From positions 670,833 through 734,832 of the forward strand of contig NW_003314281.1 in NCBI RefSeq assembly GCF_000143415.4: a stretch of DNA of 64,000 bases, written 5' to 3'. The notes below the pieces were generated by a model, which saw only the letters and a list, made by a program, of their open reading frames with translations, made no database searches and was not told the origin of the DNA. This DNA comes from Selaginella moellendorffii. Taxonomy: Eukaryota; Plantae; Lycopodiophyta. This document shows positions 17,988-64,000 of the stretch, piece after piece. The translations under genes were made by a program, and so were the position numbers. Positions within the stretch are counted from its first letter, which is position 1; each line of letters opens with the position of its first letter.

Positions 17988-19766
17988 CTAAGCTCTTCGT
18001 GTGCTGGTTATATTGGCAAGAACAACGTAAGGTGCCGCGCTTGTGGGTTCCAATCCAACTGCGCGCCTCGTCGCCACAGCCCCCCGGCGAGGATCCGTGA
18101 AGCTGGAGCAAGCTCCCAGCAAGGATTTCCAATCGCTAGCATCGCCGACGAATGGCATGGAGGTGATGAGCTCCTCCGCCTCGACCAAGTATCCCGCTCG
18201 TCCCAGCAGATCGATCATGGCGCTGTAGTGCTGCTTGATCGCTGCCAAGCCAAAATCCACGACCATGGACGCGAAGCACGCAACCCCGCGATCGACGTCG
18301 CCGGCATGGCTAAGCGCGACGAGGATGGAGCAAAAGGATACCGGGCTCGGCAGGATCTCGTCGCAGGCGATGGCGATCTGGAAGAAGTGGATCGCGAGCT
18401 CGGGATCGGCGTTTTGGGCGAGTGCCGCGAGGATTGAGTTCGCGGCCAGCGCGTCCCTGTGGAACATCCGGTCGAAGAGGAGCTTGGCTTCGCGGGTGTG
18501 GCCGTTTTGAGCGTAGGCGGAGAGGATCGAGCTCCATGCAGCGTAGCTCTTTTCAGGCATTGAATCAAACATGGAGCGAGATTTTTGGAGCTCGCCATTG
18601 CGAGAGAGAGCGTGGATCATGGCCGAGGTGGAGACGATGTCGCGGTGAGGCATCGAGTGGAAGATCTCCTGGGCGAAGTCAAGATGCCCAACTTGGGCAT
18701 ATGCGTGGAGCATCAGAGTATACGATACTGTGTCCCATTCTAGCATTTGATCAAACAAATATTTGGCTTTATCAATGTCTTTGGAGTGAACAAACGCAGC
18801 TAGGATAGCATTCCACGAAATCAAGTTTCTCTCTTTCATGGAATCAAATACTTTCTTCGCCATAACAAGATGCTCGTTCTCGGCATATGCTGTTATCATG
18901 GCCGTCCACGCGATTACATCGTGACGCTCCATTGCGTAAAATATCCTTTCGGCCTCCTCGATCTTTCCTACTTTTCCGTAGACTCCCAAGATTGCGGTGT
19001 CTGCAACATTGTTGCGCAATGGCATTTTCTCGTAGAATACCAGAGCATCTTCCAGATGACTGCTTTGGGCATATGCCGAAAGCATTGCGTTTAGCGATGA
19101 AAGGTCCCATTCTGCCATTCTATCAAAGAGATGCTTTGCTTGGCTTAACTGGCCGTTCACGGAGAAGGCAGCGATCATAGCATTGCATGAGACAGGGCTC
19201 CACTCGGGCATCCTCAGGAATATTCGTAATGCCTCTTCCGTACGTCCGGCCTTGGCATATGCCGACACAAGGGAAGTCCATCCATAGAGATTCCTCTCCT
19301 TCATTCTATCAAAGAGGATCTTTGCCCGAACGCAGTCTCCTGCCTGCGAATATGCATCCAACATGGCAGACCAAGATACCAAATTCCGCTCGGGCATGGA
19401 ATCAAACACGAGTTGTGCTGCGGGAATATGCCCGTTCTGGGAATATGCCACCACCATGGCCGTCCACGAGAGAAGATTCCTCTCCGGCATGGAATCAAAC
19501 ACGTCTTTGGCTTGGACCACATTTCCGTGCCTGCCGTACGCCGACACCATTGCCGTCCACGTCACCACATTGTGCTCCGGCATGGAATCAAAGAGCCTCT
19601 TGGACTCCTCCAGATACCCATTCTGGGCATATGCGCAGAGCATATTCACCCACGAGTACGCGTCCTTGCGCGCGATCCCATCGAACACGTGGCGCGCATG
19701 GTCGACGCGGCCGCCGATTCCCAGCGCCCGGATCAACCGGTTGCGGTCATACACGGCGTCCAGCAT
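17988..19766 (-). CDS. PLS-class PPR protein with E1-like C-terminus, no DYW
   Basis: Tandem 31-aa repeats (FDSMPERNLVSW) ending HYSAMIDLLGRAG...PYVVLANI. First in-frame ATG is at 19766. Confidence 0.9.
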   Translation of the reverse strand: MLDAVYDRNRLIRALGIGGRVDHARHVFDGIARKDAYSWVNMLCAYAQNGYLEESKRLFDSMPEHNVVTWTAMVSAYGRHGNVVQAKDVFDSMPERNLLSWTAMVVAYSQNGHIPAAQLVFDSMPERNLVSWSAMLDAYSQAGDCVRAKILFDRMKERNLYGWTSLVSAYAKAGRTEEALRIFLRMPEWSPVSCNAMIAAFSVNGQLSQAKHLFDRMAEWDLSSLNAMLSAYAQSSHLEDALVFYEKMPLRNNVADTAILGVYGKVGKIEEAERIFYAMERHDVIAWTAMITAYAENEHLVMAKKVFDSMKERNLISWNAILAAFVHSKDIDKAKYLFDQMLEWDTVSYTLMLHAYAQVGHLDFAQEIFHSMPHRDIVSTSAMIHALSRNGELQKSRSMFDSMPEKSYAAWSSILSAYAQNGHTREAKLLFDRMFHRDALAANSILAALAQNADPELAIHFFQIAIACDEILPSPVSFCSILVALSHAGDVDRGVACFASMVVDFGLAAIKQHYSAMIDLLGRAGYLVEAEELITSMPFVGDASDWKSLLGACSSFTDPRRGAVATRRAVGLEPTSAAPYVVLANITSTRRA

Positions 19767-19973
19767 GGCGGAATATCCCGCCGGGGGCGTTACGCCAGCA
19801 GAATATCCCTCACAAGGACGTTTTTTGGAAGGAATATTCCCGGGCGCTAGGTTTTCGTGGTTGTTTTTTTTTTTTCCTCTTTCGAGCGACAAGGGCGGTG
19901 TTGTGAGAGGTTCGATCGTCTCTCCTTTTTGGTTTTGTGATCTTGATCCTTGGATCGGGAGGCGCGAGAGGCG

Positions 19974-20500
19974 ATGGCGGAGCCGCTGCGCAAGCCGGTG
20001 TTTGGCAAGGTAGATCAGCTGCGGCCCGGCACCAACGGCCATACCCTCGTCGTCAAGGTCTTGAGCTCCAAGCTCGTCCTCCAGAAGCCTCGCCCTGATG
20101 GTAGCCAGGTCCGCCAAATGCGAATCGCCGAGTGTATCGTCGGGGACGAGACCGGAGTGATCGTTTTCGCCGCAAGAAACGAGCAAGGTAAGACCCTTTT
20201 GGATCTCCTCTCTTTCGGATTCTTTGCTTGACTGAGATCTTTTGTGGTTTGGATGGATTTTGGCTGTGATCTTACTGAGAACTTTTTTGCTTGTGTTCTT
20301 CTCCAGTGGATCAAGTGAAAGAAGGCACGACGATTATCATCCGCAACGCGAAGATCGACATGTTCAAGGGATCGATGCGCCTGGCGGTGGACAAGTGGGG
20401 GAGGATAGAGGTGACGGATCCGGCGGACTTTGTGGTCAAGGAGGACAACAATCTCTCCCTGGTGGAGTACGAGCTGGTAAACGTGGTGGACGAGCACTAG
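19974..20500 (+). CDS. OB-fold nucleic-acid-binding protein (At4g28440-like); 2 exons
   Basis: LRKPVFGKVDQLRPGT, GDETGVIVFAARNEQ|VD, NAKIDMFKGSMRLAVDKWGR. Confidence 0.92.
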
Positions 20501-33055: not shown

Positions 33056-33108
33056 CGCGAGGGAGAAATTAGGGTTCTTGATTTTAGGGCTCTTGGCTAG
33101 GATGATTG

Positions 33109-35052
33109 ATGAGCAATGGCTCCTCGACGATCGCCGCGCTGCTCCGGGAATGTGGGAGTTCACGCGATCTAGCTCGTGGCAGGCAGCTCCACAGCCAGAT
33201 TCTCAGCGCTGGCTACCGCTCGACGGTACTGGAGAATTCGCTCGTGAGGATGTATGGAGATTGCGGGAGCCTGGACGAGGCAGTGGATGCGTTCTCCAGG
33301 ATTTCTTCACGCAATGTCTTCTCCTGGAACATCCTTCTCTCGGCATTTGCGCAGCGAGGGCATCTGGATCTCGCGAGGGCGGTGCTGGAGATCTTCCCCG
33401 AATTTGACACGGTGAGCCACAATATCTTACTCGCTGCTTATGCTCGATCCTGCGCTATACCAGCGGCGAGAGATCTCTTCCAGCGAATGCCCGACAGAGA
33501 TCTTGTATCGTGGAACACTCTTCTCGCAGGCCTTGCCTCGAATGGCTACTACATTGACGCGAAGAACACGTTTGATACAATGCCGCGGAGAAACCTTCTC
33601 TCCTGGAACTCCATGCTCGCTACTGGCGATGGAGAGCAGCAACAGCTAGAAGATCTGGAAGAGCTCTTCGAAAAACTTCCACAGCGATGTATTGTCTCGT
33701 GGACGGAGATGGTGAGCGCTTATGCCCAGCACGGGCACTTCCAGAGTTCGTGGAGCTTGTTCTTGGCGATGCCCGAGCGTAGCATCGTGTCTCTCAACTC
33801 GGCCATGCAAGCCTTCGACCGCGAAGAAACCGTGGCGACCATTTTCGAGAAGATGCCCGAGAGGAACTTGGTCTCTTTCAATCTGAGGCTCGGTGCCACT
33901 GCAGACGGTGTCCAAGCGATGGAGCTACTCGATTTCATGCCCGAGAGGAACATCGCGTCCTGGACGTCGGTTCTAGCGGTCTTCTCCAAGAACAGTGACC
34001 ACCTCCAAACTTTAGAGCCTGCCGAGCGGATCTTCTCCAGAATGCCGCAGTGGGATGGCTTGTCGTGCAATGCCATGGCTCGTCTCTACTCGGAAGCTGA
34101 CGACTTGCCCTCCACCGCTAAGATCTTTCACACCAATCTACGAAGGGACGCGGTTTCCTGGAACACTTTGATCACGAGTTACGGCCGAAGAGGTGATGTC
34201 ACGAGTGCCAGAGAAGTTTTCCACCGGATGCCTCTTCACACACTGGCTTGCTCCACGGCGATGCTGGTGGCCATTTCTCGAAGTGGTGACGATAGCTCTG
34301 CTCGGGACTGGTTCGAGAGCATGCCTTTCCACGACATCGTTTCCTGGAACGCTATGATCTTCGCTGCAGCTGGAAAGAAGGAAAGTTTCGTGCTGTTTAG
34401 AAGAATGCAGCTAGAAGGAACCAGACCAACTTACGTGACTTACGCCACCATGATAGATTCCTGTGCCGAAGCCGCGGCTCTCGGAGATGGACGGGCGATC
34501 CACGAAAGGATACTCCAGCTCGGGTACTTTCCGGGAATTCTTGTCATCGGTAACTCACTGATCAACTTCTACAGTAGCTGTGGAGCAGTCGAGGAAGCAC
34601 TTGATGTGTTCCAAAGCATGCGGAGAAGAGACTTGATAACTTGGAGCACCATAGTGTCTGGATACGCTTGGAACGGGCTCGGCGAGAGATCGGCTCAACT
34701 CTTCCAGTTTATGTTGCTCGAAGGCTTGGATCCAAGCTCGGTCACTCTAGTGAACGTTCTCACTTCGTGCAGCCATGGAGGTCTGTTGGACTTTGGAAGA
34801 CGCTTGTTCGTGTTCGTGACCGCAGAAGTACCTGGATTTCCTGTCTGCCGAGAGCACTATGACTGCCTGGTCGATCTTCTCGGTCGATCTGGAAGGCTGG
34901 AGGAGGCTCTGGAGTTGATGGAGAGCATGCCATTCGAGCCTACTGCGCTGGGACGGATGAGCTTTGCTGCTTCGTGCAGGAAACAACACTTGGAAGGTGA
35001 TTTGAATTTACTCTACGAAGACACTAACTACATGGCTCTAAAGGGTGCCTAG
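33109..35052 (+). CDS. PLS-class PPR protein with truncated E region, no DYW
   Basis: Single ORF of PPR repeats ending HYDCLVDLLGRSGRLEEA...MPFEP. Confidence 0.9.
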   Translation: MSNGSSTIAALLRECGSSRDLARGRQLHSQILSAGYRSTVLENSLVRMYGDCGSLDEAVDAFSRISSRNVFSWNILLSAFAQRGHLDLARAVLEIFPEFDTVSHNILLAAYARSCAIPAARDLFQRMPDRDLVSWNTLLAGLASNGYYIDAKNTFDTMPRRNLLSWNSMLATGDGEQQQLEDLEELFEKLPQRCIVSWTEMVSAYAQHGHFQSSWSLFLAMPERSIVSLNSAMQAFDREETVATIFEKMPERNLVSFNLRLGATADGVQAMELLDFMPERNIASWTSVLAVFSKNSDHLQTLEPAERIFSRMPQWDGLSCNAMARLYSEADDLPSTAKIFHTNLRRDAVSWNTLITSYGRRGDVTSAREVFHRMPLHTLACSTAMLVAISRSGDDSSARDWFESMPFHDIVSWNAMIFAAAGKKESFVLFRRMQLEGTRPTYVTYATMIDSCAEAAALGDGRAIHERILQLGYFPGILVIGNSLINFYSSCGAVEEALDVFQSMRRRDLITWSTIVSGYAWNGLGERSAQLFQFMLLEGLDPSSVTLVNVLTSCSHGGLLDFGRRLFVFVTAEVPGFPVCREHYDCLVDLLGRSGRLEEALELMESMPFEPTALGRMSFAASCRKQHLEGDLNLLYEDTNYMALKGA

Positions 35053-41781: not shown

Positions 41782-42293
41782 TTAACAATAATTTACTTTA
41801 TAACGCAAGCTATCATATTCAAGCCAAGCTCTAACAACAAACTGTGTAGGTTGTGAAAATTTATAAGGTTCATCAGTTTCTGGAGGTGCAATTTCTACCC
41901 ACTCAACAAACCAAGGTGCCTCACCTCCCCAATTATCATGAGACAATTCCATTTTACAAATATGATCATATTCACCTAGACAAGGAGCTGATAATCCCCC
42001 AAAAACATCAGTATGACATCTTTCAAAATCGTTATAATTTTTATGGTCTAAATTGCGAAACATTAATGTTTGTCCCTGTGAAGTAAAAAATACAGCATTC
42101 ACATTTGCATCTGTGCCAGCATGGTCAACACATCCAGTCTTGATGGTCACTGTATATTGGCACTGAAAAACTCAAAAAAAATCAGTATACTAGAAATAAA
42201 TCAACCTTTTACCTGAGCATTAGCATCATGCAACAGAAAAATGAGAAGAAAGAAGAGGGGAGGAAGAACACAAGACCACAAATGTCTTCCCAT
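41782..42293 (-). CDS. Secreted single PLAT/LH2-domain protein; 2 exons
   Basis: Signal peptide MGRHLWSCVLPPLFFLLIFLLHDANAQ|CQYTVTIKTG...AGTDANV, FERCHTDVF, WFVEWVEI. Confidence 0.85.
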
Positions 42294-42736
42294 TTACTAA
42301 GAGATATTTAGCTTGTCTAATCTTGCCCTTTAAAAAGCAGGAATTTGTTTGTCATGACATGCTAAAAGTTTATGTATATACTTTGAATTATCCATTCATT
42401 TCCAATGACGGTAGCAAGTCCACCAAGTTTTGCCCACTCCACCAATGGCTAGATTTACAGTGCCAACTCTCTCTCTTGCAATATTATGTCTAGATTGCCT
42501 AGAGAGATGGCAAGTAATTTTTTCGAAGCTCAAGTGCCTAACCAGGCTGCAAGTGGACGTGACTGGCATAGGATTCAACATCGCCCAAGGAGTCGTGGAA
42601 ATAGAGCCCATTACTCGGTGGTGGTCAGGTTAAATTTGAAGGATGGGTTCAAATAGTTAGTAAAGAAAAAACATTTAAATTTCAGATCTTTAAACTACCC
42701 TATTTCTTTTACTAAAAGATGTAGTGATCAGGTTGG

Positions 42737-50856: not shown

Positions 50857-52853
50857 ATGGCGACTGCCGGTAAGAGTGGATCCTACATTCGATCTGGGCG
50901 CTCACTCGATCCATCCAGCAGGTCCGCTGCTCAATGACATCAAGATCTCCGCCACGCCGGTGGCGGGATCGTTCAAGGCCAAGTTTATGGATGCTTATCA
51001 CCGGCTCAAGAAGGAGCTCATCACCGATTCCGAGAGCTTTTCCCACACTTTCGAGTCGAGAGAATGGGTGTCCAAGGTGCTTGATCTCTTTTTCCCAATG
51101 CCAGACTCACATAGCCGTGTCTTTGTACCAGATGCTCGACTATAATGTTCCAGGAGGTTTGTTTTGGTCTCAAATCTCTCTTTGTTATTGGATTTGGAAG
51201 CGAATCTCTGGAGCTTTTGCTGGCAGGGAAGCTGAATCGGGGGCTCTCCGTGGTGGATAGCTTGGTGTTGCTCAGATCTGGCGAGGAGCTCAGCGAAGAC
51301 GAGCTTTTCCTTGCGTTTGCTCTTGGATGGTGCATCGAATGGGTAGGCATTCTTGTTTAGAGACGTGTTAGAAACGAGTTTTAACATTTGCTTGCACAGC
51401 TCCAAGCGTATTTCCTGGTCTTAGATGATATCATGGATGATTCACACACGAGAAGGGGTCAGCCTTGTTGGTTTAGACAGCCAAAGGTAGCTCTTTTCAG
51501 TTCTCATCTTTGAATTCTTTTTCCTTCTGGACAGGTTGGCTTAATTGCTGCAAACGATGGCATTCTTCTCCGGAATCACATATCCCGTATTTTAACAAGG
51601 CATTTCCATGACAAGCCTTACTACCAGGATCTGCGAGAGCTATTTGATGAGGTATTATTATCTGTTCACTCTGGGAGGAATTCTAATTAGTTTTCTTTAA
51701 ATGTCAGGTGGAGTATCAGACTGCCTGTGGACAGATGCTCGATCTTATTACAACTCCACCCGGCGAAGTCGATTTGTCCAAATACGTAATGGACACGTAA
51801 GAAATCTCATTTCTCAAACCTTTGTCTTGACTTTGTTTTCCATGCAGCTATTTAAGAATTGTAAAATACAAGACAGCATATTATTCTTTCTATCTTCCAG
51901 TAAGTATTGCAACCTTGTTCTATGACAGCTTGACTGTGTTTCTGGTGCTTCACAGGTTGCATGTGCTCTGTACATGTCTGGAGAAGATGATAAATCCAAA
52001 TTTGAATCTGCTGAGAGAATCCTTGTGCAGATGGGAACTTACTTTCAAATACAGGTGTGCATACAACTTTGTTTTCCAATCCTTACTGACAGAAATTTGT
52101 TTACCAGGATGATTATTTAGATTGCTACGGCCATCCCGACGTTATTGGAAAAGTAAGTTCTCTTGCGATTTACCTTAGTTTTTGCAGGAGAAACCATTCC
52201 CCGGGGCATAGTGATTTGCGTTTTCCTTGGTGCTAAAGCTTTGGTCTCTTCTTTGGTCCTACTAATAATCCTTTGGATATTCAGGTTGGAACCGATATCG
52301 AGGATACCAAATGCTCGTGGCTTATTGTACAAGCGATAGCTCGTGCAATCCCCGAGCAGAAATCCCGACTTTACAATAACTATGGACGCAAAGATCCAGC
52401 GTGCGTCGCGGAGGTGAAGAAGGTGTACAATGAATTAAACCTCGAGGTAAGAACTTACTCTTCTTGCTGTTTTAGCATTCTTGTTCTTGAGTGCTTTTCT
52501 TGTGATGGATGCCAACTCTTGACAAGATTGTATTGGAATGCGACAGTGAATGCCCCTCGTTTGAGGCCTGGATAAGCTTCTTGGTCTCGTCCAGGCTAGA
52601 AACGGGGCTAGAGAAGAACTCTTTCGCTCTGTGACTGACCTCGAGTAAGCATTTTTCTCGTTGTGCTGCAGAAACTTTTCCTCGATTACGAAAGCGAGAG
52701 CTATGACAACTTCATGTCGATAATCGACGACGAGAAAAGCATTGAGCTACAGGTAACTTACATTGTACACTCCAATCCCTCTCATTCGTTTCGTTTCCAT
52801 TGCAGCAAGTCTTGAAGCTCTTCCTTTCCAAAATCTACAAGCGTCAAAAATAA
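50857..52853 (+). CDS. FPS: Farnesyl diphosphate synthase; multi-exon
   Basis: DYNVPG|[44 protein letters not shown]|[23 protein letters not shown]-stop. Confidence 0.95.
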
Positions 52854-53226
52854 AATCGCCCAGACAGTGATGACAAAACCTTTTTTTCCAAAGCTTTTAA
52901 TCCCAGCCGTTGGTTGTGTTCCACGAAAAGGGACGTGAACTCTATATATCTCTTGTTTTAGGGTTCTTGGTTAGGGTTGGCGATGTCTTCTCTTCAAATG
53001 GACGATGACAAATTCTCTAAATGCAAAGAAGCGATCCAAAGACTAATGGCGACGATCGAGAGCTTTGATGCCAATTGTGATTACGATTCGAATTCCGATA
53101 TGTATGAAGATTATGCGCAGTTCCTCAAATCATCATCCAAGATTACAGAAGAGATTATCAAAGTAGACTCTCGTAGGTGGTCAAAAACTTGTTGAAAAAG
53201 TCAAACTGTAAATAAAGATAGTCAAA

Positions 53227-53950
53227 TTGTGCCAAAGACTCATTCAATCTTGCAACACTCGCGAATCTCGATTCCACGCCACGATTCCTACCTTGCGATC
53301 TTGGGATCTGCCTACTTCCGCGCCAATCGCCTCCTCGACGCGGCCAAGATCTTCAATTCCATGCCCACCAGGCGCCTCGTTTCCTGGAACATCATGGTCT
53401 CGACGTGCTGGGCATCTAGATCGCGCGCGCGAGCTGTTTGACAAGATGCCGCTCCGCGATGTCATCGGCTGGAATTCGATGCTGGCGGCATTGGTCTGAT
53501 TCGAAGGGATGCCCGGGAAGTGCCTCGTCTAGTGGAACTTTGATGCTCTCCCTCTATCCAAACTGCGATCTCGCCCAGGCCAAAACGATGATCGATGAGA
53601 TGCCGCAGAGAAATGTGATATCGTGGACGATTGTGCTCGTCGCCCTTGCCAAGAGTGGATATATGCGAGAGGCAAAGGCAGTGTTTGCTTCCATACCTGT
53701 TCACGACCTCTTCGCTCTCAACGCGATGCTCGAAGCATATGCCCAAAATGGGCATTTTTGCACTAGGCGCTGAAGCTATGTTTCCAGTTTGAGGGACGTG
53801 AACACGATTCAGCGTTGGCATGAAATGGTGAGCTGGAAAACGCCACGTTGGTTTCTAGCGCCATGCCGGAGAGGGATTTTCTGTCGTGGACGTCCATGCT
53901 GGTCGCAGCACGGGCATTTGGAGGAAGCAAAGCAAATGTTTGATGGCCAA
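53227..53950 (+). pseudogene. Decayed copy of the 5' part of the PPR gene at 56304
   Basis: Near-identical DNA to ~56320-57220 with deletions, frameshifts and stops. Confidence 0.92.
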
Positions 53951-55869
53951 TGCAAGGAATTATGGCAAGGGTATAGGCCCCTGAGCGTGGATCCTACTGA
54001 CTTGGCATCTTGTGAATATTCCAGAATTGAAGATCCATGATGAAGATCATGAAGCATGACATTTTTTCCCACTATGTGTTCTCGGAAACACATGCCAGCC
54101 AACCATTTTTTAATGGTTGCAAAATCCATGTGGCTATTCATGCCATTTTGAGTTGGTTTCATCATTAAAAACATGTACATTTAACCATCGTGAAATGAGG
54201 GGTGATGATCACAATCGACAATCTTCCATGGATTCCATCATGAAAATGGAGCTTAGACCATGGGCAAGCAGGCATTGGATTTTGTTTCTCATGGTGTTGG
54301 TTCATATTTACGGTGTGTTGGACTTGCAAAAACTCAAAGTATTGGTGAATGGTTCAGAGAGGCACGGCAAAGTGCTAGGGTTTGTGGCATGACGGCACCG
54401 ATCTTCGGGGGAGATTATTCTTTCTCCCCAACATAGCCTTTCATAGGGTCTTGTGACATCACACCAGCTCCAGCTCGCAATGGAGTGCTTGAGAAAGTAC
54501 ATATTAGAGGCAGGATGGACCTGGATGGGTGGGATGGCAAAGATTCGCAAGGTCTCTGGAGGACTTCAGGTCTAAGTTCTCAACAAAAGGCATGAACAAT
54601 TTCTCGCTTAAACACTGCAACCATCTTGCCATTGCATTTGAATGCTAGGAAGAAAATAAAATCAAAACAAATTATAGTCACAGTTATACATCTTTATTAT
54701 GTACTTTACACGAAAAATATTTAATGATGTTTTTATTAACATTTATTAAAGTTTCAATAATAAATATTTTTTATAAATTTAAAAAGTTTTATCTTTAAGT
54801 TCTTTTGAACTTGGATGAACTATATGTTTTGCAAATAAAATTATAGTGATGATAAATTCAATGTAATAAATTTTAAAAGTATTTGCTATAAAACTAATTA
54901 AGAAATGCTAGAAATATTTCTAATGAAAGCTATAATCCTCTAAATTTATATCTTATTTATTATGTTAAAAATAAGAACGATCTGGTAATTTTTAATTTTA
55001 ATTTTTTAAAATCTAACTTATTATTGATTAGTATTATTATAAAATAACAATTAAAACCATTTGTCATTCACTTAGCAGGTCACTTAGTAGGTACTGTTGC
55101 ATTATATTTTTTTATTATCTAAGTTATAAGTAATAGTGACTCTATAGAAGGAAGAGAGTACAATAATCACATTTGACTTTGAAAAGTGTAATATAGATGA
55201 ATTTTACATAAGAGGTATAATATCACATGAAAATTCAGGAGCTGATGCTGAATGTTGGGTTGATGTATTAAATTTATCAACTGGGTTTGTAACACGATTT
55301 AATTTAGCATATTTAAACCCAGCGGTCTCATGCTACTTGGGGCACTTGTAAACAGTATATAAATGAATGAATGAATATAGAAACCTGGATAGAGAAGGAT
55401 AATTTAGTGCATGTGGAAAATAAATGTAACATCTAGTAATAAATAATTTGCTACATTTAGTAGCAACATTTAGTTTGCTTTATTACAATGTTTATATATC
55501 TTGTTCTAGTGCTAGAAATGAAACAAGCAAAAGGAGTGCTGAATTTTTTTATAAGAAAAAATATTAAGCTGGAGATATAGTGTTTTTCTATAACCCATAA
55601 CATCTTGCAAGATACTGCCAGCAACCTCTGTAATCAGATGTTTTTTGTTTTAAGTAGAAATTTAAGATCAATCTCGCTAGGCTTAGACCTTAACAAAGCT
55701 ATTAAGCTCTATCAATTTGTTAAAAACTCATCAAAGACGGAGTTTACAATGTACAGGAAGTCTTAAAAAGCAGAAATTCTCCTTGATAGTTAGCAAGATT
55801 CCCTTCATGGGGATCCTCTAGTTGAGATGGCAAAATTACTGATTCTTGCTGATTGGGCATTCCATTCTC

Positions 55870-56303: not shown

Positions 56304-58439
56304 ATGGAAAGGAAAGAGTGCCTTGGACTCATTCAATCTTGCAACACACTCCCACGCGCGCTGGAGCTGCGCTCGCGAATCTCGATTCCACGCCACGATT
56401 CCTTTCTCGCCAACAAGCTGATCGAGATGTTTGGGCGATGCGGGAGTGTGGATCACGCCCACGAGATCTTCGCAGGGATGGGCGCCGCCAGGGACGATTT
56501 CTCCTGGGATCTCATGCTCACTGCCTACTTCCACGCGAATCGCCTCCTCGACGCGGCCAAGATCTTCGATTCCATGCCCACCAGGCGCCTCGTCTCCTGG
56601 AACATCATGGTCTCTGCCTATGCCCGTGCTGGGCATCTAGATCGTGCGCGCGATCTCTTTGAGAAGATGCCACTCCGCGATGTCATCTGCTGGAATTCGA
56701 TGCTGGCGGCATTCGTCCGGGCCGGGAGCGTGGAGGATGCGAAGGAGCTCTTTGATCGGATGCCCGGGAAGTGGCTAGTGTCATGGAACTTGATGCTCTC
56801 GCTCTACGCAAACTGCGATCTCGCCCAGGCCAAAGCGATGATCGATGAAATGCCGCAGCGGAATGTGATTACCTGGACGATTGTGCTCGTCGCCTTTGCC
56901 AAGAGTGGAGATTTGCGAGAGGCCAAGGCAGTGTTTGATTCCATGCCTGTTCACGACCTCTTTGCTCTCAACGCAATGCTCGAAGCATATGCCCGAAACG
57001 GGCATTTGCACGAAGCGATGAGACTATTTTCCCAGTTTCAAGAGAGGGACTTGGTGACATGGAACACGATCCTTGCAGCGTTGGCACGAAATGGTGAGCT
57101 GGAAATTGCCACGTCTGTTTTTAGCGCCATGCCGGAGAGGGATTTGCTGTCGTGGACGTCCATGCTGGTCGTGTATGCCCAGCACGGGCATTTGGAGGAG
57201 GCAAAACAAATGTTTGATGGCATGCCTGAGACGGACATGGTGACGTGTACTGCCATGTTGGACGTGTATGCGAGGCATGGAGATGCCAGGGAGGCAAGAA
57301 AAGTCTTCGATGACATGCCACAAAGGGATATGGTGTCTTGGACAGCGATGCTGACTGTATATGCCCAGGCGGGGGACTTGCTGGCAACGAAGAAGTTGTA
57401 TGACGAGATGCCACGTCAGGATTACGTGTCGTGGACTTCCATGCTTGGAGCGTACACGAGGCATGGCAGCGTAGAAGAGGCTAAGGGCATGCGTGCTGAT
57501 GTGGCACAGGACGACTTGATTCTCGGCACAGCAATGCTGACTGGATATGCCCAGCAAGGGCATATTCTAGAAGCAAAGCGAATGTTTGATTCTATGCCTA
57601 GGAGGGACGTGGTATCCATAAACGCGATGCTATCGACTTATGTGCAGGGTGGCTGCTTAGAAGAGGCACGGGCATTGTTCGATTCGATGCCAGAGAGGAA
57701 TCTTATTACCTGGAATGCCATGATCCATGGATATACTCTAAGAGGGCATTTCCAAGATGCTATTTTCTTGTCATGTAAGATTCCTGAGCACTCACTTGTC
57801 TCGCGGACTTTGGTGCTCTCGGCATATGCCCAGAATGGGAATCTGACTGTAGCAGAAAAACTCTTCAATTCTATGCCAGAGAGGGACACAATATCTTGGA
57901 ATGTGATGCTTGCGGCGTATACACAAAACGCGCAAATCACCGAGGCCTCTCAACTCTTTGAAGCAATGGCGTTAATACACAACCCGGACGAGATCACACT
58001 CATCTGGGTGTTGATCTCGTCCAGCCATTACGGCAAAGCTTTCGCTGCTAGGACAAATTTCCGATCCATGATCAGCGATTTCCAAATGAAACCCACAAAG
58101 CTCCACTACTGCTGCATGGTCGACGTCCTCGGCCGTGCAGGGTATCTAAGAGACGCCAGTGATCTCATCGCAAAGATGCCTGTTCTTCCCGATTCCTTGG
58201 AATGGACGAGCTTGCTGGGAGCTTGCTTGAGTCACAACGATCTAGAATTGGGAGAGGTCGCCGCGAAGAAGGTGGCGGGTTTTAATCCCGGGGCTGTGAC
58301 GCCATACGTGCTCTTGGCAAGCATGTATAGGAGCCGGGGCCACATCCGCCGTCCATTCCCAACGGGCGGATGCGGTGGCAATCTCGCCGTCCAAACGAAC
58401 GGCTGGGATGCGTCTTTTTCCCACCGACAGGGTATTTAA
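56304..58439 (+). CDS. PLS-class PPR protein with E1-like C-terminus, no DYW
   Basis: 711-aa ORF of 31-aa repeats ending HYCCMVDVLGRAG...PYVLLASMY. Confidence 0.92.
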   Translation: MERKECLGLIQSCNTLPRALELRSRISIPRHDSFLANKLIEMFGRCGSVDHAHEIFAGMGAARDDFSWDLMLTAYFHANRLLDAAKIFDSMPTRRLVSWNIMVSAYARAGHLDRARDLFEKMPLRDVICWNSMLAAFVRAGSVEDAKELFDRMPGKWLVSWNLMLSLYANCDLAQAKAMIDEMPQRNVITWTIVLVAFAKSGDLREAKAVFDSMPVHDLFALNAMLEAYARNGHLHEAMRLFSQFQERDLVTWNTILAALARNGELEIATSVFSAMPERDLLSWTSMLVVYAQHGHLEEAKQMFDGMPETDMVTCTAMLDVYARHGDAREARKVFDDMPQRDMVSWTAMLTVYAQAGDLLATKKLYDEMPRQDYVSWTSMLGAYTRHGSVEEAKGMRADVAQDDLILGTAMLTGYAQQGHILEAKRMFDSMPRRDVVSINAMLSTYVQGGCLEEARALFDSMPERNLITWNAMIHGYTLRGHFQDAIFLSCKIPEHSLVSRTLVLSAYAQNGNLTVAEKLFNSMPERDTISWNVMLAAYTQNAQITEASQLFEAMALIHNPDEITLIWVLISSSHYGKAFAARTNFRSMISDFQMKPTKLHYCCMVDVLGRAGYLRDASDLIAKMPVLPDSLEWTSLLGACLSHNDLELGEVAAKKVAGFNPGAVTPYVLLASMYRSRGHIRRPFPTGGCGGNLAVQTNGWDASFSHRQGI

Positions 58440-58473
58440 GTTAGGGTCGACCTGAGGTTTCTTCTTGTAGTGA

Positions 58474-60097
<1,624 letters not shown>

Positions 60098-60267
60098 TGA
60101 CAATGGATTGACTATGTACATATTTTTCTACTGTGTACAGAGCTTATTTAAATTTAATATTATTGTTATCTATCAATTAGTAGGTAGTTAAAGCGGTTAA
60201 GCAAGTGCTTATAAAGTATCATCCTTCAAACAAAAATCATAGTCACAACTTGTTGTATGTCCGACGC

Positions 60268-62157
60268 TTAAAGTTTTTCACCCACCACCAGTGCTGTTAA
60301 GTCTGTGTCTGTGACAATCTACCATGAAACAACTGAATAAGATCTGGAAACCAAGCCAAGATAGTAGAAGTGTCACCTTCTTCTCGTGGGCCACTGCCTT
60401 GAACCTCATGAAAACTTCGCCTAACGCTTCCGTGTCGAGATTATATCCCAGCTGAAACAATTCCAAAACCATCTACTTTGTGATCCGAAAGAGACATCAG
60501 TACCTTTGTCAAACGTGCACTGAGGGCGTGCTTGCCGCTACAACACGAAAGAAGAAGAAGATGACAATGTATAAGATTCTAGAAACACAAACCTGTGCTT
60601 CCCGAGGACTATGTGTTCGGCGTGTGTTTGAACGAGCCCGATATCGCTTGGTGATAAAATCTCGTAAGTTGCCCGGTTCTTGAGAATACCATCCTGACCA
60701 AAACAATTTCCACGTAAAAACTAAAAAGGTTTCGAGATGACATACTTGGTGAACTCCACTTTCATGAACAAAAGCGTTGGCTCCAACGATGGCTTTGTTT
60801 GGCTGGACGAGCATTCCAGTGTAGTCTTCGACCTGGAGCATGGAAACCAGGCCACAGTGAGTTTCTTCCAAGAAACTTGGAGAGATCTTCATCAACTTTT
60901 AGACGCCACAAGTTCCTTCCAAGAAACTTGGAGAGAACTTGTCAAGCTCTCTTACCGCTTGACTTGTTGGATATATGTGCTTGGTTTCAATCCCCGTGTA
61001 AAGACCTTGCAAGAGTGGATCTCTACTGCGGCACTTCATCGCCATCACCACCTAAATCGATCACGAGTGTCGACCGACCAAATCAATCAAAGTCTAAGAG
61101 TTCCCCACGCATACCTCCTCGAGTGACGCGTTTCCAGCTCGCTCTCCAATGCCATTCATGGAAACTTCTAGCTGGCGAGCTCCCGCAAGCGCTGCCTTTA
61201 ATTCGATCCAAAACCCAAAGGAGTCTCAAACAAAACGTGGGAAACTCCGGAAAAATGGTTTTTACCGCAAGCGTGTTGGACGTGGCGAGGCCAAGATCAT
61301 TGTGGCAATGACAGGAAATGGTTACTCCCTCGATTCCCTGGGTCCCCTGTTTCACCCGATTGACGAGGCTGGCGATCTCGGATGGAAACAAGTACCCAAC
61401 AGTGTCTCCAATCCCAACGGAGGTAGCTCCGGCCTCGATCACGGCCTCGAAAATCTCGCACAGAAACTCTGGATCGGATCTGTGGAGGAAAGGATTGCAA
61501 TTCGATGTGATCGAAAGAGCATTTGAATGGAATTTACCTCCCAGAATCCTCGGCACCGAACTGGATGTCGTGGCAGCCCAGGGATTTGGCGTAGGCCACC
61601 ATCTCCGCGGCAGTGGCGAGAACTTGCGAGGGCGATTTGTTGAGCTTGTGCTTCATGTGGATGTCGCTGGTGGAAATGAAGGCCAGGATTCGCGGCTTGT
61701 GGGCGTATCGGATGGCCCTCCAAGCAGCATCAATGTCGGATTTGACACAGCGCGCGAGTCCGCAAATCACTGGCACGTGTTGTTCTTCGCCTTGACCTTC
61801 TTCGTCTCGACCACGATGCAGATCTTCGCCTTGTTTGTAGCTCCCGACCTGGCGAGCGATGAGCTCCACTGCCCGCGACTCCTGGGGCGATGTCGCGGGG
61901 AATCCCGCGTCGATCACGTCCACTCGCAGCCTGGCCAGGCGCTTGGCGATGTCGAGCTTCTGCTGGATGGAGAAGCACACTCCCGGAGATTGCTCGCCAT
62001 CTCTCAGGGTGGTGTCGAGGATCTGGACATAGTTTTGCGGCAGAGATTGTTGCTCGCGAGTCGAGTGTGCGCGGCCATTTGCGGAGCTCCTGATTAGAGG
62101 CTGGATCCCAGCTCTCCTCGACTGCCCAAGACTTGGTGCCGTGCCGCCAAGCATCAT
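60268..62157 (-). CDS. 2-isopropylmalate synthase-like enzyme lacking the C-terminal regulatory domain (MAM-like); 9 exons
   Basis: [62 protein letters not shown]; ends [16 protein letters not shown]-stop. Confidence 0.9.
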
Positions 62158-62523
62158 CGTGAATCTTCTCAAGGAATGTAAATACCTAAAGTAAAAGCAC
62201 GTCATGACAAACAATTTCCTGCTTTTTAAAGAGCGAGGTGACGTAGACGAGATAAATATTTCTTAGTTAAATGGTCTTCCCCTCTTATTTCTTCTCATGT
62301 TTCTGTTGCATGAGCAGCCATTTTGTGTGCTTCTTCATTTTAGATGCTTTTGTGGTTTGTGGCTGTCCGAGTCTGTGCACCACCCATTCTGGCCTCCCTC
62401 AGCCCAACTGAGAAGAGCCAATTGACCTTCGACGCGGAAGCTCTTCACTGGTCACGATCCTAGGCCCTCTTCTTTCGTTGCCAGGTCGTGTCATGGTATT
62501 AGTTGTTGCAATGACGGGACTGC

Positions 62524-62566
62524 ATTCTAGGAGGATTCTAGGAGGATTCTAGGAGGATTCTAGGAG
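62524..62566. repeat. 11-bp tandem repeat (ATTCTAGGAGG) x~4
   Basis: Directly visible. Confidence 0.9.
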
Positions 62567-63822
62567 CGAGCCATGGCTCCCAGGCGCTTGTTGTTGAGCA
62601 CGGTGTCATGGGTTTTAGACATCATGGGGACTGAGCGCTTGTAGTTGTCTTCGGCAGTTGCCGGTTGCGCCTGTGAAGCCTTATCTTTTCCTCTTGCCCC
62701 GTTTCTAGCAAGACTTCTTCTCTAAAAGCCCATCAACGGTGCAATGCCCTCTGAGCTCGTACTGTGTTCCTAGCAAAGGGTGTGGCCTTGAAACTGCTGC
62801 CAGACAGTCTTAGCAAGCGAGTGGCAATGATCCACTTCAACAAATTTCATGCAAAAGTTTCCCAGATCGAATTGTGGTATTGTCCTTGAGAATTTAGGCT
62901 TCAAATTTCAAATTTAAGAATTCAGAATTACATTACAAAAGTTTTTCTACAATGCACCCAGGTTGGACAGCTCTACTGTGTTGGAAATTCTTGCAGTCCC
63001 CTCCTCATAAACGCTCTGATTCGATAAAGCTTCAATCTGTCGTTGTTGTGGCTTTACAAGGGACAGGGACAGAGAGAGAGAGACAACACACCTACGCACG
63101 CACAGTTAGAGAGAGAGTTAGAGAGAGAGAGAGAGATATTTTTAGGTCACCGTGGCACCAGTCTGGGGCGATGTTAGCGAGGATTTGTTGGCGTCGCTCA
63201 AGCATTGAAGGAAGGCTGCTCCCTGTCGACTCTATGGAGAGGAATCCCGCAAGCAAGGACGTGGTAGATTCTGGAAGGTATAGTTGCAGTCGTGTGTAGC
63301 CTGGGCAGCGAAAGATGGCATGTTCCACGTCCTCGATCTCCCTTTCACAGACTGGGCATCCCCAATCTCCCCAGGGGGTGGGGGACCGTCACCATGCTCC
63401 GATCACGCTATGGAGATTGTGCACTCTAGTCGGTATCTCGATAGCGTTTGCAGAGCGCATTTCCCGAGTGGGTTGTAGACTGAAGGCCCGATTGTTCGAG
63501 TGATGTTTACGTTGGTGAGATAGTATTGGAATTTTGTCTTGCAATCTGCACCATGAAGCCAGCCTGTAAATGCTAGGCTGATCCAGCTATCAAGGACAGT
63601 GGTAACTAGTTGCAGCATCCAGGTCGACTTTAAGTTTCTTTGTCCATCGCCTAGAGTCTTACCACCAGCCTGTGTTATGACTGTCTGCAAGTATGCATAG
63701 CAGTCCATATGGGAATCGGTTACAGAGACTCCATCATCAAGAAGTGGCGGTTGATGGCCTCGATGTCCGCTCACCCTTTGTCTGGTTGTCCTGGTGCCCA
63801 TGACACCCATGTAAGCACGAAA

Positions 63823-64000
63823 TTGCCCAAACCCAATGGCGGTAGCTCTGCAGCCTCGAAAATCTCGCACAAAACCTCTGGATTGGACATGTGGAGGAAA
63901 GGATTGCAATTCGATGTGATCCAAAGAGCATTGGAATGTCATGGCAGCCCAAGGATTTGGCACAGCGGTAGTGAGAACTTGCGAGGGTGTTTTGTTGAGC
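63823..64000 (-). pseudogene. Decayed partial copy of the IPMS-like gene, running off the window end
   Basis: Collinear with ~61405-61645, including intron 1, with deletions that remove the FGAED region and the splice donor. Confidence 0.88.

What the first reader, a model, noticed from the sequence alone, without database searches (positions are those of the whole stretch)
60268..62157. Truncated IPMS with MAM-type active site: candidate convergent 2-oxo-acid chain-elongation enzyme in a non-Brassicales plant
Seen: a 9-exon open gene with intact DRE and HCH metal motifs that stops at ...[11 protein letters not shown]. The convergent protease stop is only 170 bp away, leaving no room for the C-terminal Leu-binding regulatory domain. 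Pocket motifs read RILAFISTS (~61680), IQFGAED (~61550) and VGIGDTVG (~61405). Known, recalled from memory: canonical plant IPMS has RIHTFIATS, VEFSPED and LNIPDTVG, while Brassicaceae MAM enzymes have RILVFTSTS, IQFGCED and (T/G)IGDTVG-like motifs and also lost the regulatory domain. The H-to-L, S-to-G, N-to-G and P-to-G changes enlarge the substrate pocket. Inference: independent evolution of a feedback-insensitive enzyme that accepts larger 2-oxo acids, pointing to an undescribed specialised amino-acid or acyl chain-elongation pathway in a lineage not known to make glucosinolates.
Basis: partly seen in the sequence, partly recalled or inferred. Interest (0 to 1): 0.85.

Follow-up and report, generated by a model that had tools for sequence, protein, structure and literature searches.

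The report
Truncated MAM-like IPMS in Selaginella
The spikemoss Selaginella moellendorffii expresses and maintains a copy of the leucine-pathway enzyme isopropylmalate synthase that has lost its leucine-sensing domain and has the widened substrate pocket of the mustard-family chain-elongation enzymes, so it probably condenses acetyl-CoA with a larger 2-oxo acid in an unknown pathway; this is a new lycophyte case of a trick already known in several flowering plants.

Summary
Window 62157..60268 (-) holds a 9-exon, 452-aa gene identical to GenBank SELMODRAFT_173046 of Selaginella moellendorffii. It has the HMGL-like and HCS_D2 domains but no LeuA_dimer domain, and no trace of that domain lies downstream. 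Spliced transcript contigs from four studies match every intron and end about 120 nt past the stop, inside the 3' end of the convergent protease gene. All catalytic residues are kept. Four of the five substitutions that the literature uses to separate MAM from IPMS are present with the same residues (H>L158, S>G201, N>G229, P>G231); the fifth position (L134) is unchanged. The second haplotype carries the same ORF, with dN/dS 0.14, so the gene is under purifying selection. A full-length IPMS (624 aa) lies on another scaffold.

Independent origin is likely but not shown by trees. The branch is 4-10 times longer than canonical IPMS branches and moves between analyses. AU tests reject neither a clade with its own IPMS nor one with Brassicales MAM.

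The same pocket signature also occurs in Adiantum, Cupressales, Asteraceae and a legume protein. This is a new member of a known, recurrent kind, and its substrate is unknown. Another scan note (s1-374979) flagged the adjacent, overlapping stretch of this genome.

The parts
60268..62157 (-). Coding span (ATG to TAA) of the truncated IPMS-like gene. It has 9 exons and gives 452 aa = SELMODRAFT_173046.
   Evidence: every intron is confirmed by spliced contigs
60147..62174 (-). Extent of the longest single transcript contig (1497 nt): 17-nt 5' UTR and 121-nt 3' UTR. There is no further exon.
   Evidence: run X2 record 9. Contigs of the other three runs end at 62162-62178 at the 5' side, and at the 3' side three of them merge with the protease mRNA.
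61538..62157 (-). Exon 1 (aa 1-207). It encodes a low-confidence N-terminal leader (aa 1-35), the R52/D53/Q56 catalytic motif, a 13-residue acidic loop insertion (about aa 108-125), L134 (unchanged Mt-L143 position), L158, S162, Q199, G201, A202 and E203.
61266..61479 (-). Exon 2 (aa 207-278). It encodes the pocket strand V-G229-I-G231-D-T233-V-G and the metal ligands H264 and H266.
60746..61195 (-). Exons 3-5 (61195-61115, 61051-60956, 60832-60746). They encode the end of the TIM barrel and the start of subdomain I, including H360 and the proposed general base H365 (BjMAM1-A H388).
   Evidence: PMC8468904
60268..60693 (-). Exons 6-9 (60693-60593, 60537-60504, 60451-60377, 60318-60268). They encode the HCS_D2 helical subdomain. 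The stop falls 16 codons into the exon homologous to exon 9 of the full-length S. moellendorffii IPMS.
60098..60267 (.). 170-bp gap between the two convergent stop codons. It is occupied by overlapping 3' UTRs and has no LeuA_dimer coding potential.
58474..60097 (+). Convergent RD21-like cysteine protease gene (Inhibitor_I29, Peptidase_C1 and Granulin domains). It bounds the IPMS-like gene at its 3' end.
63827..64000 (-). Decayed, frameshifted fragment of an older tandem copy ('copy B', which runs on to about 64331 beyond the window). It is 66-68% identical in nt to the gene's exon 1-intron 1-exon 2 region and is present on both haplotypes.

Best explanation
This is a functional, nuclear, IPMS-derived Claisen-condensing enzyme of the DRE-TIM metallolyase fold. 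Shown: it is transcribed, correctly spliced, under purifying selection and keeps every catalytic residue. It lacks the C-terminal LeuA_dimer domain. Four pocket-lining residues are replaced by Leu or Gly. Inferred: it uses the IPMS/MAM chemistry, in which a divalent metal held by D53, H264 and H266 binds a 2-oxo acid, and acetyl-CoA is enolised with H365 as base and added to C2, with R52 as acid, giving a 2-alkylmalate. Without the regulatory domain it should be insensitive to leucine. With the widened pocket it should prefer a 2-oxo acid larger than 2-oxoisovalerate. It would then be the committing step of a one-carbon 2-oxo-acid elongation route whose substrate and end product in Selaginella are unknown. 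It most likely arose by duplication of a plant IPMS within the lycophyte line and converged on the MAM-type pocket.
For: The gene model equals the GenBank protein. The domains are HMGL-like and HCS_D2 only, as in Capsella MAM and apple CMS, whereas SmIPMS has LeuA_dimer at aa 456-599. There is no regulatory-domain remnant in the window or in 22.7 kb of scaffold. Spliced contigs from 4 runs of 4 studies carry all 8 junctions, and one 1497-nt contig covers the whole mRNA. The second haplotype (P0358) has the same ORF and stop, with dN/dS 0.14, dS 0.054 and p=4e-6 against neutrality. The best solved relative is B. juncea MAM1-A (6e1j), at E=1e-138 over residues 40-448 by sequence and TM 0.88 by fold. 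R52, D53, Q56, E203, T233, H264, H266 and H365 align to BjMAM1-A R89, D90, Q93, E227, T257, H288, H290 and H388 (roles from PMC8468904). L158, Q199, G229 and G231 occupy BjMAM1-A V182, E223, A253 and P255; G201 aligns with BjMAM1-A G225. Four of the five MAM-defining changes (H167L, S216G, N250G, P252G) are present (PMC8490860). 136 of 157 universally invariant IPMS columns are kept, and the 21 changes cluster on columns also changed in MAM, CMS and FEN1-type enzymes. All 8 intron positions and phases equal the first 8 of SmIPMS.
Against: No enzyme assay or metabolite exists. Pocket residues do not predict the substrate: the identical L/Q/G-A/G-I-G set occurs in a legume N56/FEN1-clade protein, whose relatives make homocitrate. 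In MAM, single or few substitutions change specificity only modestly (PMC8468904). The L143 position is unchanged. No dedicated isomerase, dehydrogenase or aminotransferase gene lies nearby. No ortholog was found in another Selaginella species. Trees give no positive support for an origin from the lycophyte IPMS.
Confidence: 0.62

Rival explanations
1. It is a feedback-insensitive but otherwise ordinary IPMS, like tomato IPMS3 or the banana splice isoform. It still uses 2-oxoisovalerate and simply raises flux to leucine-derived products.
For: Truncation at the same hinge as other Leu-insensitive forms. L134 (the Mt-L143 position) is unchanged. It still scores above the cut-off of one NCBIfam IPMS equivalog model (546 vs 532 bits), though a Capsella MAM does the same.
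Against: The H, S, N and P residues, invariant in all 23 canonical IPMS from bacteria to angiosperms, are all replaced. Removing these side chains should weaken binding of the small substrate. The S216G and P252G exchanges are the ones reported to introduce MAM activity into IPMS (PMC8490860).
Confidence: 0.13
2. It condenses acetyl-CoA with a different class of 2-oxo acid, for example 2-oxoglutarate (homocitrate synthase, FEN1-like), pyruvate or 2-oxobutyrate (citramalate synthase), or an aromatic 2-oxo acid.
For: The pocket set L/Q/G-A/G-I-G is identical to Phaseolus P0305, which is sister to an Aeschynomene FEN1. 7 of the 10 fixed changes of that pair fall on columns changed here. Homocitrate synthases are among the solved relatives.
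Against: Apple CMS fills the same positions with bulkier residues (C, T, V-C, T-F-T), not Gly, so pyruvate is unlikely. No basic residue was gained at the changed positions to bind a distal carboxylate (one search list). Selaginella has no known need for plant-made homocitrate (general knowledge).
Confidence: 0.17
3. It is a decaying or non-functional duplicate, transcribed but without enzymatic role, like the broken tandem copies beside it.
For: It has a very long branch (1.1-2.9 substitutions per site against a median end branch of 0.2-0.3 in the trees, most of them canonical IPMS). Two neighbouring partial copies are clearly dead. No ortholog was seen in other species.
Against: dN/dS is 0.14 between haplotypes, with an intact ORF and the same stop in both. 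All catalytic and 87% of universally invariant residues are kept. Splicing is exact in four studies. The barrel is modelled confidently (pLDDT above 90 for most of residues 40-340).
Confidence: 0.05
4. It belongs to an old vascular-plant paralogue clade, together with the truncated Adiantum genes and perhaps the Cupressales 'MAM-like' genes, rather than being a Selaginella-lineage invention.
For: It groups with the Adiantum truncated pair (bootstrap 91, SH-aLRT 51) and, in the quick tree, with Cupressales. It shares 10 of 20 Adiantum-fixed changes, 8 to the same residue, including positions not among the named specificity sites (A60V, F47L, L217F, T290S). It shares none of the residues unique to SmIPMS.
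Against: Support is weak, and the partner changes with taxon and column sampling, as expected for long-branch attraction plus convergence. A profile of the putative clade recovers no further members ahead of canonical IPMS. The Cupressales proteins keep the regulatory domain.
Confidence: 0.2

Closest known systems
Methylthioalkylmalate synthase (MAM1/MAM3 of Arabidopsis; BjMAM1-A, PDB 6e1j), EC 2.3.3.17
   Same: It is the best solved relative by sequence and fold. It has the same two-domain architecture without LeuA_dimer and the same catalytic residues. Four of the five IPMS-to-MAM substitutions (H167L, S216G, N250G, P252G) are present, plus A>S162 and Q>H266 (PMC8490860).
   Different: The host is a lycophyte with no known glucosinolates. 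Identity to MAMs is only 53-54%, lower than to canonical IPMS (55-59% in A2). L143 is not changed to Ile. The N-terminal RPEYIPN motif that MAMs keep is lost. The extra intron seen in a Capsella MAM gene is absent. The C-terminus is 16-27 residues shorter than in MAMs.
Canonical plastid IPMS (S. moellendorffii P0276, 624 aa), EC 2.3.3.13
   Same: Same fold and chemistry. All 8 introns lie at the same positions and phases as the first 8 of SmIPMS. Identity in the catalytic region is 62%.
   Different: It has no regulatory domain, since the stop comes 16 codons into the exon 9 homologue. The pocket residues H, E, S-P and N-I-P are replaced by L, Q, G-A and G-I-G. It has a 13-residue acidic loop insertion and a shorter N-terminus.
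Tomato IPMS3, apple citramalate synthase (MdCMS, P0361) and patchouli IBMS1
   Same: These are IPMS duplicates recruited to specialised metabolism outside Brassicales and freed from Leu inhibition. MdCMS ends at exactly the same hinge position (PMC7826400; 10.1101/2021.09.28.462264).
   Different: MdCMS narrows the pocket (C, T, V-C, T-F-T) for pyruvate. By the preprint's account, IBMS1 keeps its C-terminal regulatory domain and differs from IPMS at only one of the seven named specificity sites (M at the L143 position), and IPMS3 is a true IPMS that lacks the regulatory domain; neither sequence was examined here. The Selaginella protein widens the pocket with Gly.
Uncharacterised truncated IPMS-like proteins of Adiantum (P0174, P0376) and Asteraceae (P0165, P0170, P0185), and Cephalotaxus 'MAM-like' (P0154, P0373)
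   Same: They carry the same L...G...G-I-G pocket signature. The Adiantum and Asteraceae proteins are truncated at the same hinge.
   Different: They come from different lineages and none has a published function in the library searched. The Cupressales forms retain LeuA_dimer. Relationship to the Selaginella gene is unresolved.

Membership tests
IPMS/HCS/CMS group of DRE-TIM metallolyases (Pfam HMGL-like + HCS_D2) | TIM-barrel HMGL-like domain followed by the helical post-HMGL subdomain | tested here: met
   PF00682 at 2e-81 (aa 44-338) and PF22617 at 1e-27 (aa 352-436). The AF2 model matches 6e1j with TM 0.88.
IPMS/HCS/CMS group of DRE-TIM metallolyases (Pfam HMGL-like + HCS_D2) | Catalytic set: Arg-Asp of the LRDGEQ motif, two metal-binding His (H-x-H), Thr of DTVG, Glu of the ED motif, His of HESGxHQDG | tested here: met
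   R52, D53, Q56, E203, T233, H264, H266 and H365 align to BjMAM1-A R89, D90, Q93, E227, T257, H288, H290 and H388.
Canonical 2-isopropylmalate synthase (EC 2.3.3.13) | C-terminal LeuA_dimer allosteric domain | tested here: not met
   No PF08502 hit. No remnant in the DNA. Transcripts end 121 nt after the stop.
Canonical 2-isopropylmalate synthase (EC 2.3.3.13) | Invariant 2-oxoisovalerate pocket L143/H167/S216/N250/P252 (Mt numbering) | tested here: not met
   Only L143 is kept. H>L158, S>G201, N>G229 and P>G231 are changed, while all 23 canonical sequences are invariant at these columns.
Methylthioalkylmalate synthase (EC 2.3.3.17) | Loss of the regulatory domain | tested here: met
Methylthioalkylmalate synthase (EC 2.3.3.17) | Five active-site exchanges L143I, H167L, S216G, N250G, P252G (PMC8490860) | tested here: inconclusive
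   Four of five are present with the identical residue, and L143 is unchanged. Brassicaceae MAMs themselves vary at these positions.
Methylthioalkylmalate synthase (EC 2.3.3.17) | Descent from the Brassicales IPMS duplication (membership of the MAM clade) | tested here: inconclusive
   The AU test does not reject a clade with MAM (p=0.65 and 0.26), but the placement shifts with sampling. The host is a lycophyte, identity to MAM is lower than to IPMS, and the extra Capsella MAM intron is absent. Vertical membership is biologically implausible.
Methylthioalkylmalate synthase (EC 2.3.3.17) | Activity on omega-methylthio-2-oxoalkanoates | not testable with these tools
   Needs an enzyme assay.
Plant citramalate synthase (MdCMS type) | Pocket narrowed by bulkier residues for pyruvate/2-oxobutyrate | tested here: not met
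   MdCMS has C/T/V-C/T-F-T where this protein has L/Q/G-A/G-I-G.

The most novel reading that the evidence does not exclude
A lycophyte runs a previously unknown acetyl-CoA-dependent 2-oxo-acid chain-elongation pathway, producing homologated amino acids or acyl chains. Its committing enzyme reached the same four pocket substitutions and the same domain loss as Brassicales MAM independently, after roughly 400 million years of separation. The same solution was also found in ferns, conifers and Asteraceae, which would make it a predictable, repeatable route of enzyme evolution across vascular plants.
Probability: 0.4. Interest if true: 0.75.

Novelty: new member of a known kind. Interest (0 to 1): 0.55.

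Why it matters
Recruitment of IPMS into specialised metabolism by loss of the Leu-binding domain plus pocket remodelling is a textbook case of neofunctionalisation, but every characterised example is a eudicot. An expressed, selected lycophyte enzyme with the same four residue changes would extend the pattern to non-seed plants. It would give a clean natural replicate for studying convergent active-site evolution, and it points to an unknown class of elongated 2-oxo-acid-derived metabolites in Selaginella. The recurrence of the L/G/G-I-G signature in ferns, Cupressales, Asteraceae and legumes suggests a simple sequence rule for mining such enzymes. It also warns that trees of this family are misled by convergence and long branches.

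Tried and rejected
1. Regulatory domain hidden downstream or under the protease gene: tblastn with the full-length SmIPMS at E<=10 found nothing beyond residue 466 in the window or in L001.

2. Gene-model artefact: rejected, because the GenBank protein is identical, the second haplotype is the same, and RNA contigs carry all the junctions.

3. Pseudogene: rejected by dN/dS 0.14 and the conserved catalytic set.

4. Dating the duplication by phylogeny: five tree builds and three AU tests gave shifting placements, so this was abandoned as uninformative. Counting shared lineage-specific residues also gave no signal (0 of 15 with SmIPMS).

5. Intron evidence: the gene shares all its introns with SmIPMS, but a tomato-relative IPMS also has the long first exon. 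Only the absence of the extra Capsella MAM intron is informative, and only weakly.

6. Search for orthologues in other Selaginella species or a wider clade: none came above canonical IPMS in two whole-database searches.

7. Biosynthetic gene cluster: the neighbours are PPR, Surp/CID, CCCH, F-box, FPPS-like and protease genes.

8. Literature: no paper in the library names the gene or a lycophyte IPMS derivative. The primary paper of de Kraker & Gershenzon 2011 (PMC3051243) is not held, so the five substitutions are cited through PMC8490860.

9. The Diphasiastrum IPMS locus could not be fetched.
Full report
**What is there**

The minus strand of window 62157..60268 carries a 9-exon gene. Every intron is GT..AG and 52-123 nt long. 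The 1359-nt CDS gives 452 aa ending ...[11 protein letters not shown].

A whole-library search with exon 1 led to a scaffold of Selaginella moellendorffii (GCA_000143415.2, GL377585.1), of which the window is a part. The spliced product is identical to the GenBank protein SELMODRAFT_173046 / XP_002972928 (P0151). So the gene is annotated, as 'hypothetical protein / 2-isopropylmalate synthase A'. No paper in the library names it.

Pfam finds HMGL-like (aa 44-338) and HCS_D2 (aa 352-436) and no LeuA_dimer. This is the architecture of a Capsella MAM and of apple citramalate synthase. The species' own IPMS (P0276, 624 aa, scaffold GL377709.1) has LeuA_dimer at aa 456-599.

**Is the truncation real?**

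- tblastn with the full-length SmIPMS at E<=10 finds nothing beyond its residue 466 in the 64-kb window or in the 22.7-kb locus L001.
- The convergent RD21-like protease CDS ends at 60097, 170 bp from the IPMS-like stop codon at 60270-60268.
- Contigs of four public runs from four studies, laid on 58300-62700, carry all eight junctions exactly as modelled (CT..AC on the plus strand). This shows they derive from spliced RNA.
- One 1497-nt contig spans 62174..60147, that is 17 nt of 5' UTR, the whole CDS and 121 nt of 3' UTR.
- In the other three runs the contig runs on into the protease mRNA, so the two 3' UTRs overlap. No junction leads to any further exon.
- The stop lies 16 codons into the exon homologous to SmIPMS exon 9. 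This is the hinge before the regulatory domain, the same place where apple CMS and Asteraceae and Adiantum IPMS-like proteins end.

**Is it functional?**

The second haplotype (GL377651.1, P0358, 454 aa) has the same flanking protease and PPR genes. It carries the same ORF and stop, with 8 replacements and one 2-codon indel. Across the CDS there are 17 synonymous and 8 non-synonymous differences: dS 0.054, dN 0.0078, dN/dS 0.14, p=4e-6 against neutrality. Intron divergence is about 5%.

Of 157 catalytic-region columns invariant in 23 canonical IPMS, from Chloroflexota to angiosperms, the protein keeps 136.

An AlphaFold2 model has pLDDT above 90 over most of the barrel, with mean 79.8. The low-confidence parts are the N-terminal 35 residues, the inserted acidic loop and parts of subdomain I. 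Its best structural match is B. juncea MAM1-A (6e1j, TM 0.88 normalised by target).

**The pocket**

Against 6e1j (E=1e-138, residues 40-448), the catalytic residues align as follows (roles from PMC8468904):

| This protein | BjMAM1-A |
|---|---|
| R52 | R89 |
| D53 | D90 |
| Q56 | Q93 |
| E203 | E227 |
| T233 | T257 |
| H264 | H288 |
| H266 | H290 |
| H365 | H388 |

The four BjMAM1-A residues said to guide substrate preference are V182, E223, A253 and P255. They correspond to L158, Q199, G229 and G231.

The literature separates Arabidopsis MAM1/3 from IPMS by L143I, H167L, S216G, N250G and P252G (PMC8490860, citing de Kraker & Gershenzon 2011). Here four of the five are present with the identical residue: L158, G201, G229 and G231. 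The L143 position (L134) is unchanged.

The 21 changes at universally invariant columns fall preferentially on columns that are also fixed differently in other derived forms:

| Derived form | Overlap | p | Note |
|---|---|---|---|
| Brassicaceae MAM | 8 of 16 | 2e-4 | 7 to the same residue |
| Apple CMS / Trema | 10 of 18 | 5e-6 | |
| Adiantum truncated proteins | 10 of 20 | 2e-5 | |
| FEN1 / Phaseolus pair | 7 of 10 | 3e-5 | |

**Origin**

The protein is about equally distant from all canonical IPMS (57-63% identity) and slightly further from MAMs (53-54%). Its branch is 1.1 to 2.9 substitutions per site, against a median end branch of 0.2-0.3 in the same trees.

Its placement changes with sampling:
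- with an Adiantum truncated gene and Cupressales in the quick tree;
- with the Adiantum truncated pair at the base of plants in the careful tree, support 91/51;
- unresolved at the base of Viridiplantae when only canonical sequences are included;
- beside the FEN1/Tarenaya/MAM group after removing 40 columns where it departs from the plant-invariant state.

AU tests do not reject a clade with SmIPMS (p=0.41). They also do not reject a clade with Brassicales MAM (p=0.65, with a log-likelihood 12 units better than the free search; p=0.26 without the convergent columns). It shares none of the 15 residues unique to SmIPMS.

I read this as long-branch attraction plus real molecular convergence. 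The IBMS preprint describes the same artefact for MAM, CMS and IPMS3 (10.1101/2021.09.28.462264).

Gene structure fits vertical descent from a plant IPMS. All eight introns sit at the positions and phases of the first eight SmIPMS introns. An additional intron present in a Capsella MAM gene is absent.

Independent evolution is thus the most reasonable reading, because MAMs arose inside Brassicales. It is not demonstrated here. An older paralogue shared with ferns cannot be excluded.

**Context**

Upstream lie two dead partial copies.
- Copy A (L001 9916-11063, outside the window) is 80-95% identical in nt, present on haplotype 1 only, and stops at about residue 340.
- Copy B (window 63827 to about 64331) is 66-68% identical, frameshifted and present on both haplotypes.

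GenBank merges them into the chimeric model SELMODRAFT_413264. This is the 'tandem array' of the scan's note s1-374979. There is one intact gene per haplotype.

No isomerase, dehydrogenase, aminotransferase or tailoring gene is nearby.

**Mechanism and standing**

Shown:
- It is an expressed, constrained IPMS-family protein.
- It lacks the regulatory domain.
- It has a complete catalytic set.
- Four pocket-lining residues are changed, to Leu or Gly.

Inferred:
- It performs Leu-insensitive Claisen condensation of acetyl-CoA with a 2-oxo acid larger than 2-oxoisovalerate.
- This commits carbon to a one-carbon elongation cycle whose later steps could use the ordinary Leu-pathway isomerase and dehydrogenase.

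The substrate cannot be named. The identical pocket set occurs in a legume N56/FEN1-clade protein, and MAM specificity depends on combinations of residues (PMC8468904).

Domain loss plus pocket remodelling of IPMS is already known in Brassicales MAM, tomato IPMS3 and apple CMS, with a variant in patchouli IBMS and banana splice isoforms. This is therefore a new member of a known kind. It is the first I can find in a non-seed plant, and it is a strong natural replicate of the MAM solution.

Noticed in passing
proteins P0174, P0376, P0154, P0373, P0158, P0165, P0170, P0185, P0305 (no window coordinates): The L/G/G-I-G pocket signature of the Selaginella gene recurs in truncated IPMS-like proteins of two Adiantum species and several Asteraceae. 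It also occurs in Cephalotaxus 'MAM-like' and Cryptomeria proteins and in a Phaseolus N56-like protein, all of which keep the regulatory domain. None has a published function in the library searched.
   Followed up: partly
window 61304-61302 (H266) and the alignment: Every canonical streptophyte IPMS reads H-C-Q-N-D at the second metal-ligand position. Bacterial IPMS and every derived plant form (MAM, CMS, FEN1, Selaginella, Adiantum, Asteraceae) read H-C-H-N-D. This looks like a recurrent Q>H change accompanying neofunctionalisation.
   Followed up: no
window 63403-64000 (-) and L001 9916-12299: The GenBank model SELMODRAFT_413264 (P0001, 500 aa) is a chimera. It stitches together two decayed partial IPMS-like copies and unrelated ORF sequence (window 63403-63963). 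Copy A is specific to haplotype 1.
   Followed up: yes
window 42226-42617 (+): There is weak nucleotide similarity (71-73%) to the 5' flank and part of exon 1 of the IPMS-like gene, in the opposite orientation. No protein-level match was found. It may be another old fragment.
   Followed up: no
window 59973-60035 (+), protease gene 58474-60097: RNA contigs of three runs splice out an in-frame 63-nt intron in the granulin tail of the RD21-like protease. The 453-aa GenBank model appears to read through it. The protease 3' UTR overlaps the IPMS-like 3' UTR, so short-read assemblers fuse the two convergent mRNAs.
   Followed up: partly
window 17988-20186 (-), 33106-35052 (+), 56304-58439 (+), about 53200-54400 (+): There are three long intronless PPR genes, plus a decayed PPR copy closely similar to the 56304-58439 gene.
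   Followed up: no
window about 50876-52575 (+): Several ORF pieces resemble farnesyl diphosphate synthase by eye. This was not tested with a profile.
   Followed up: no
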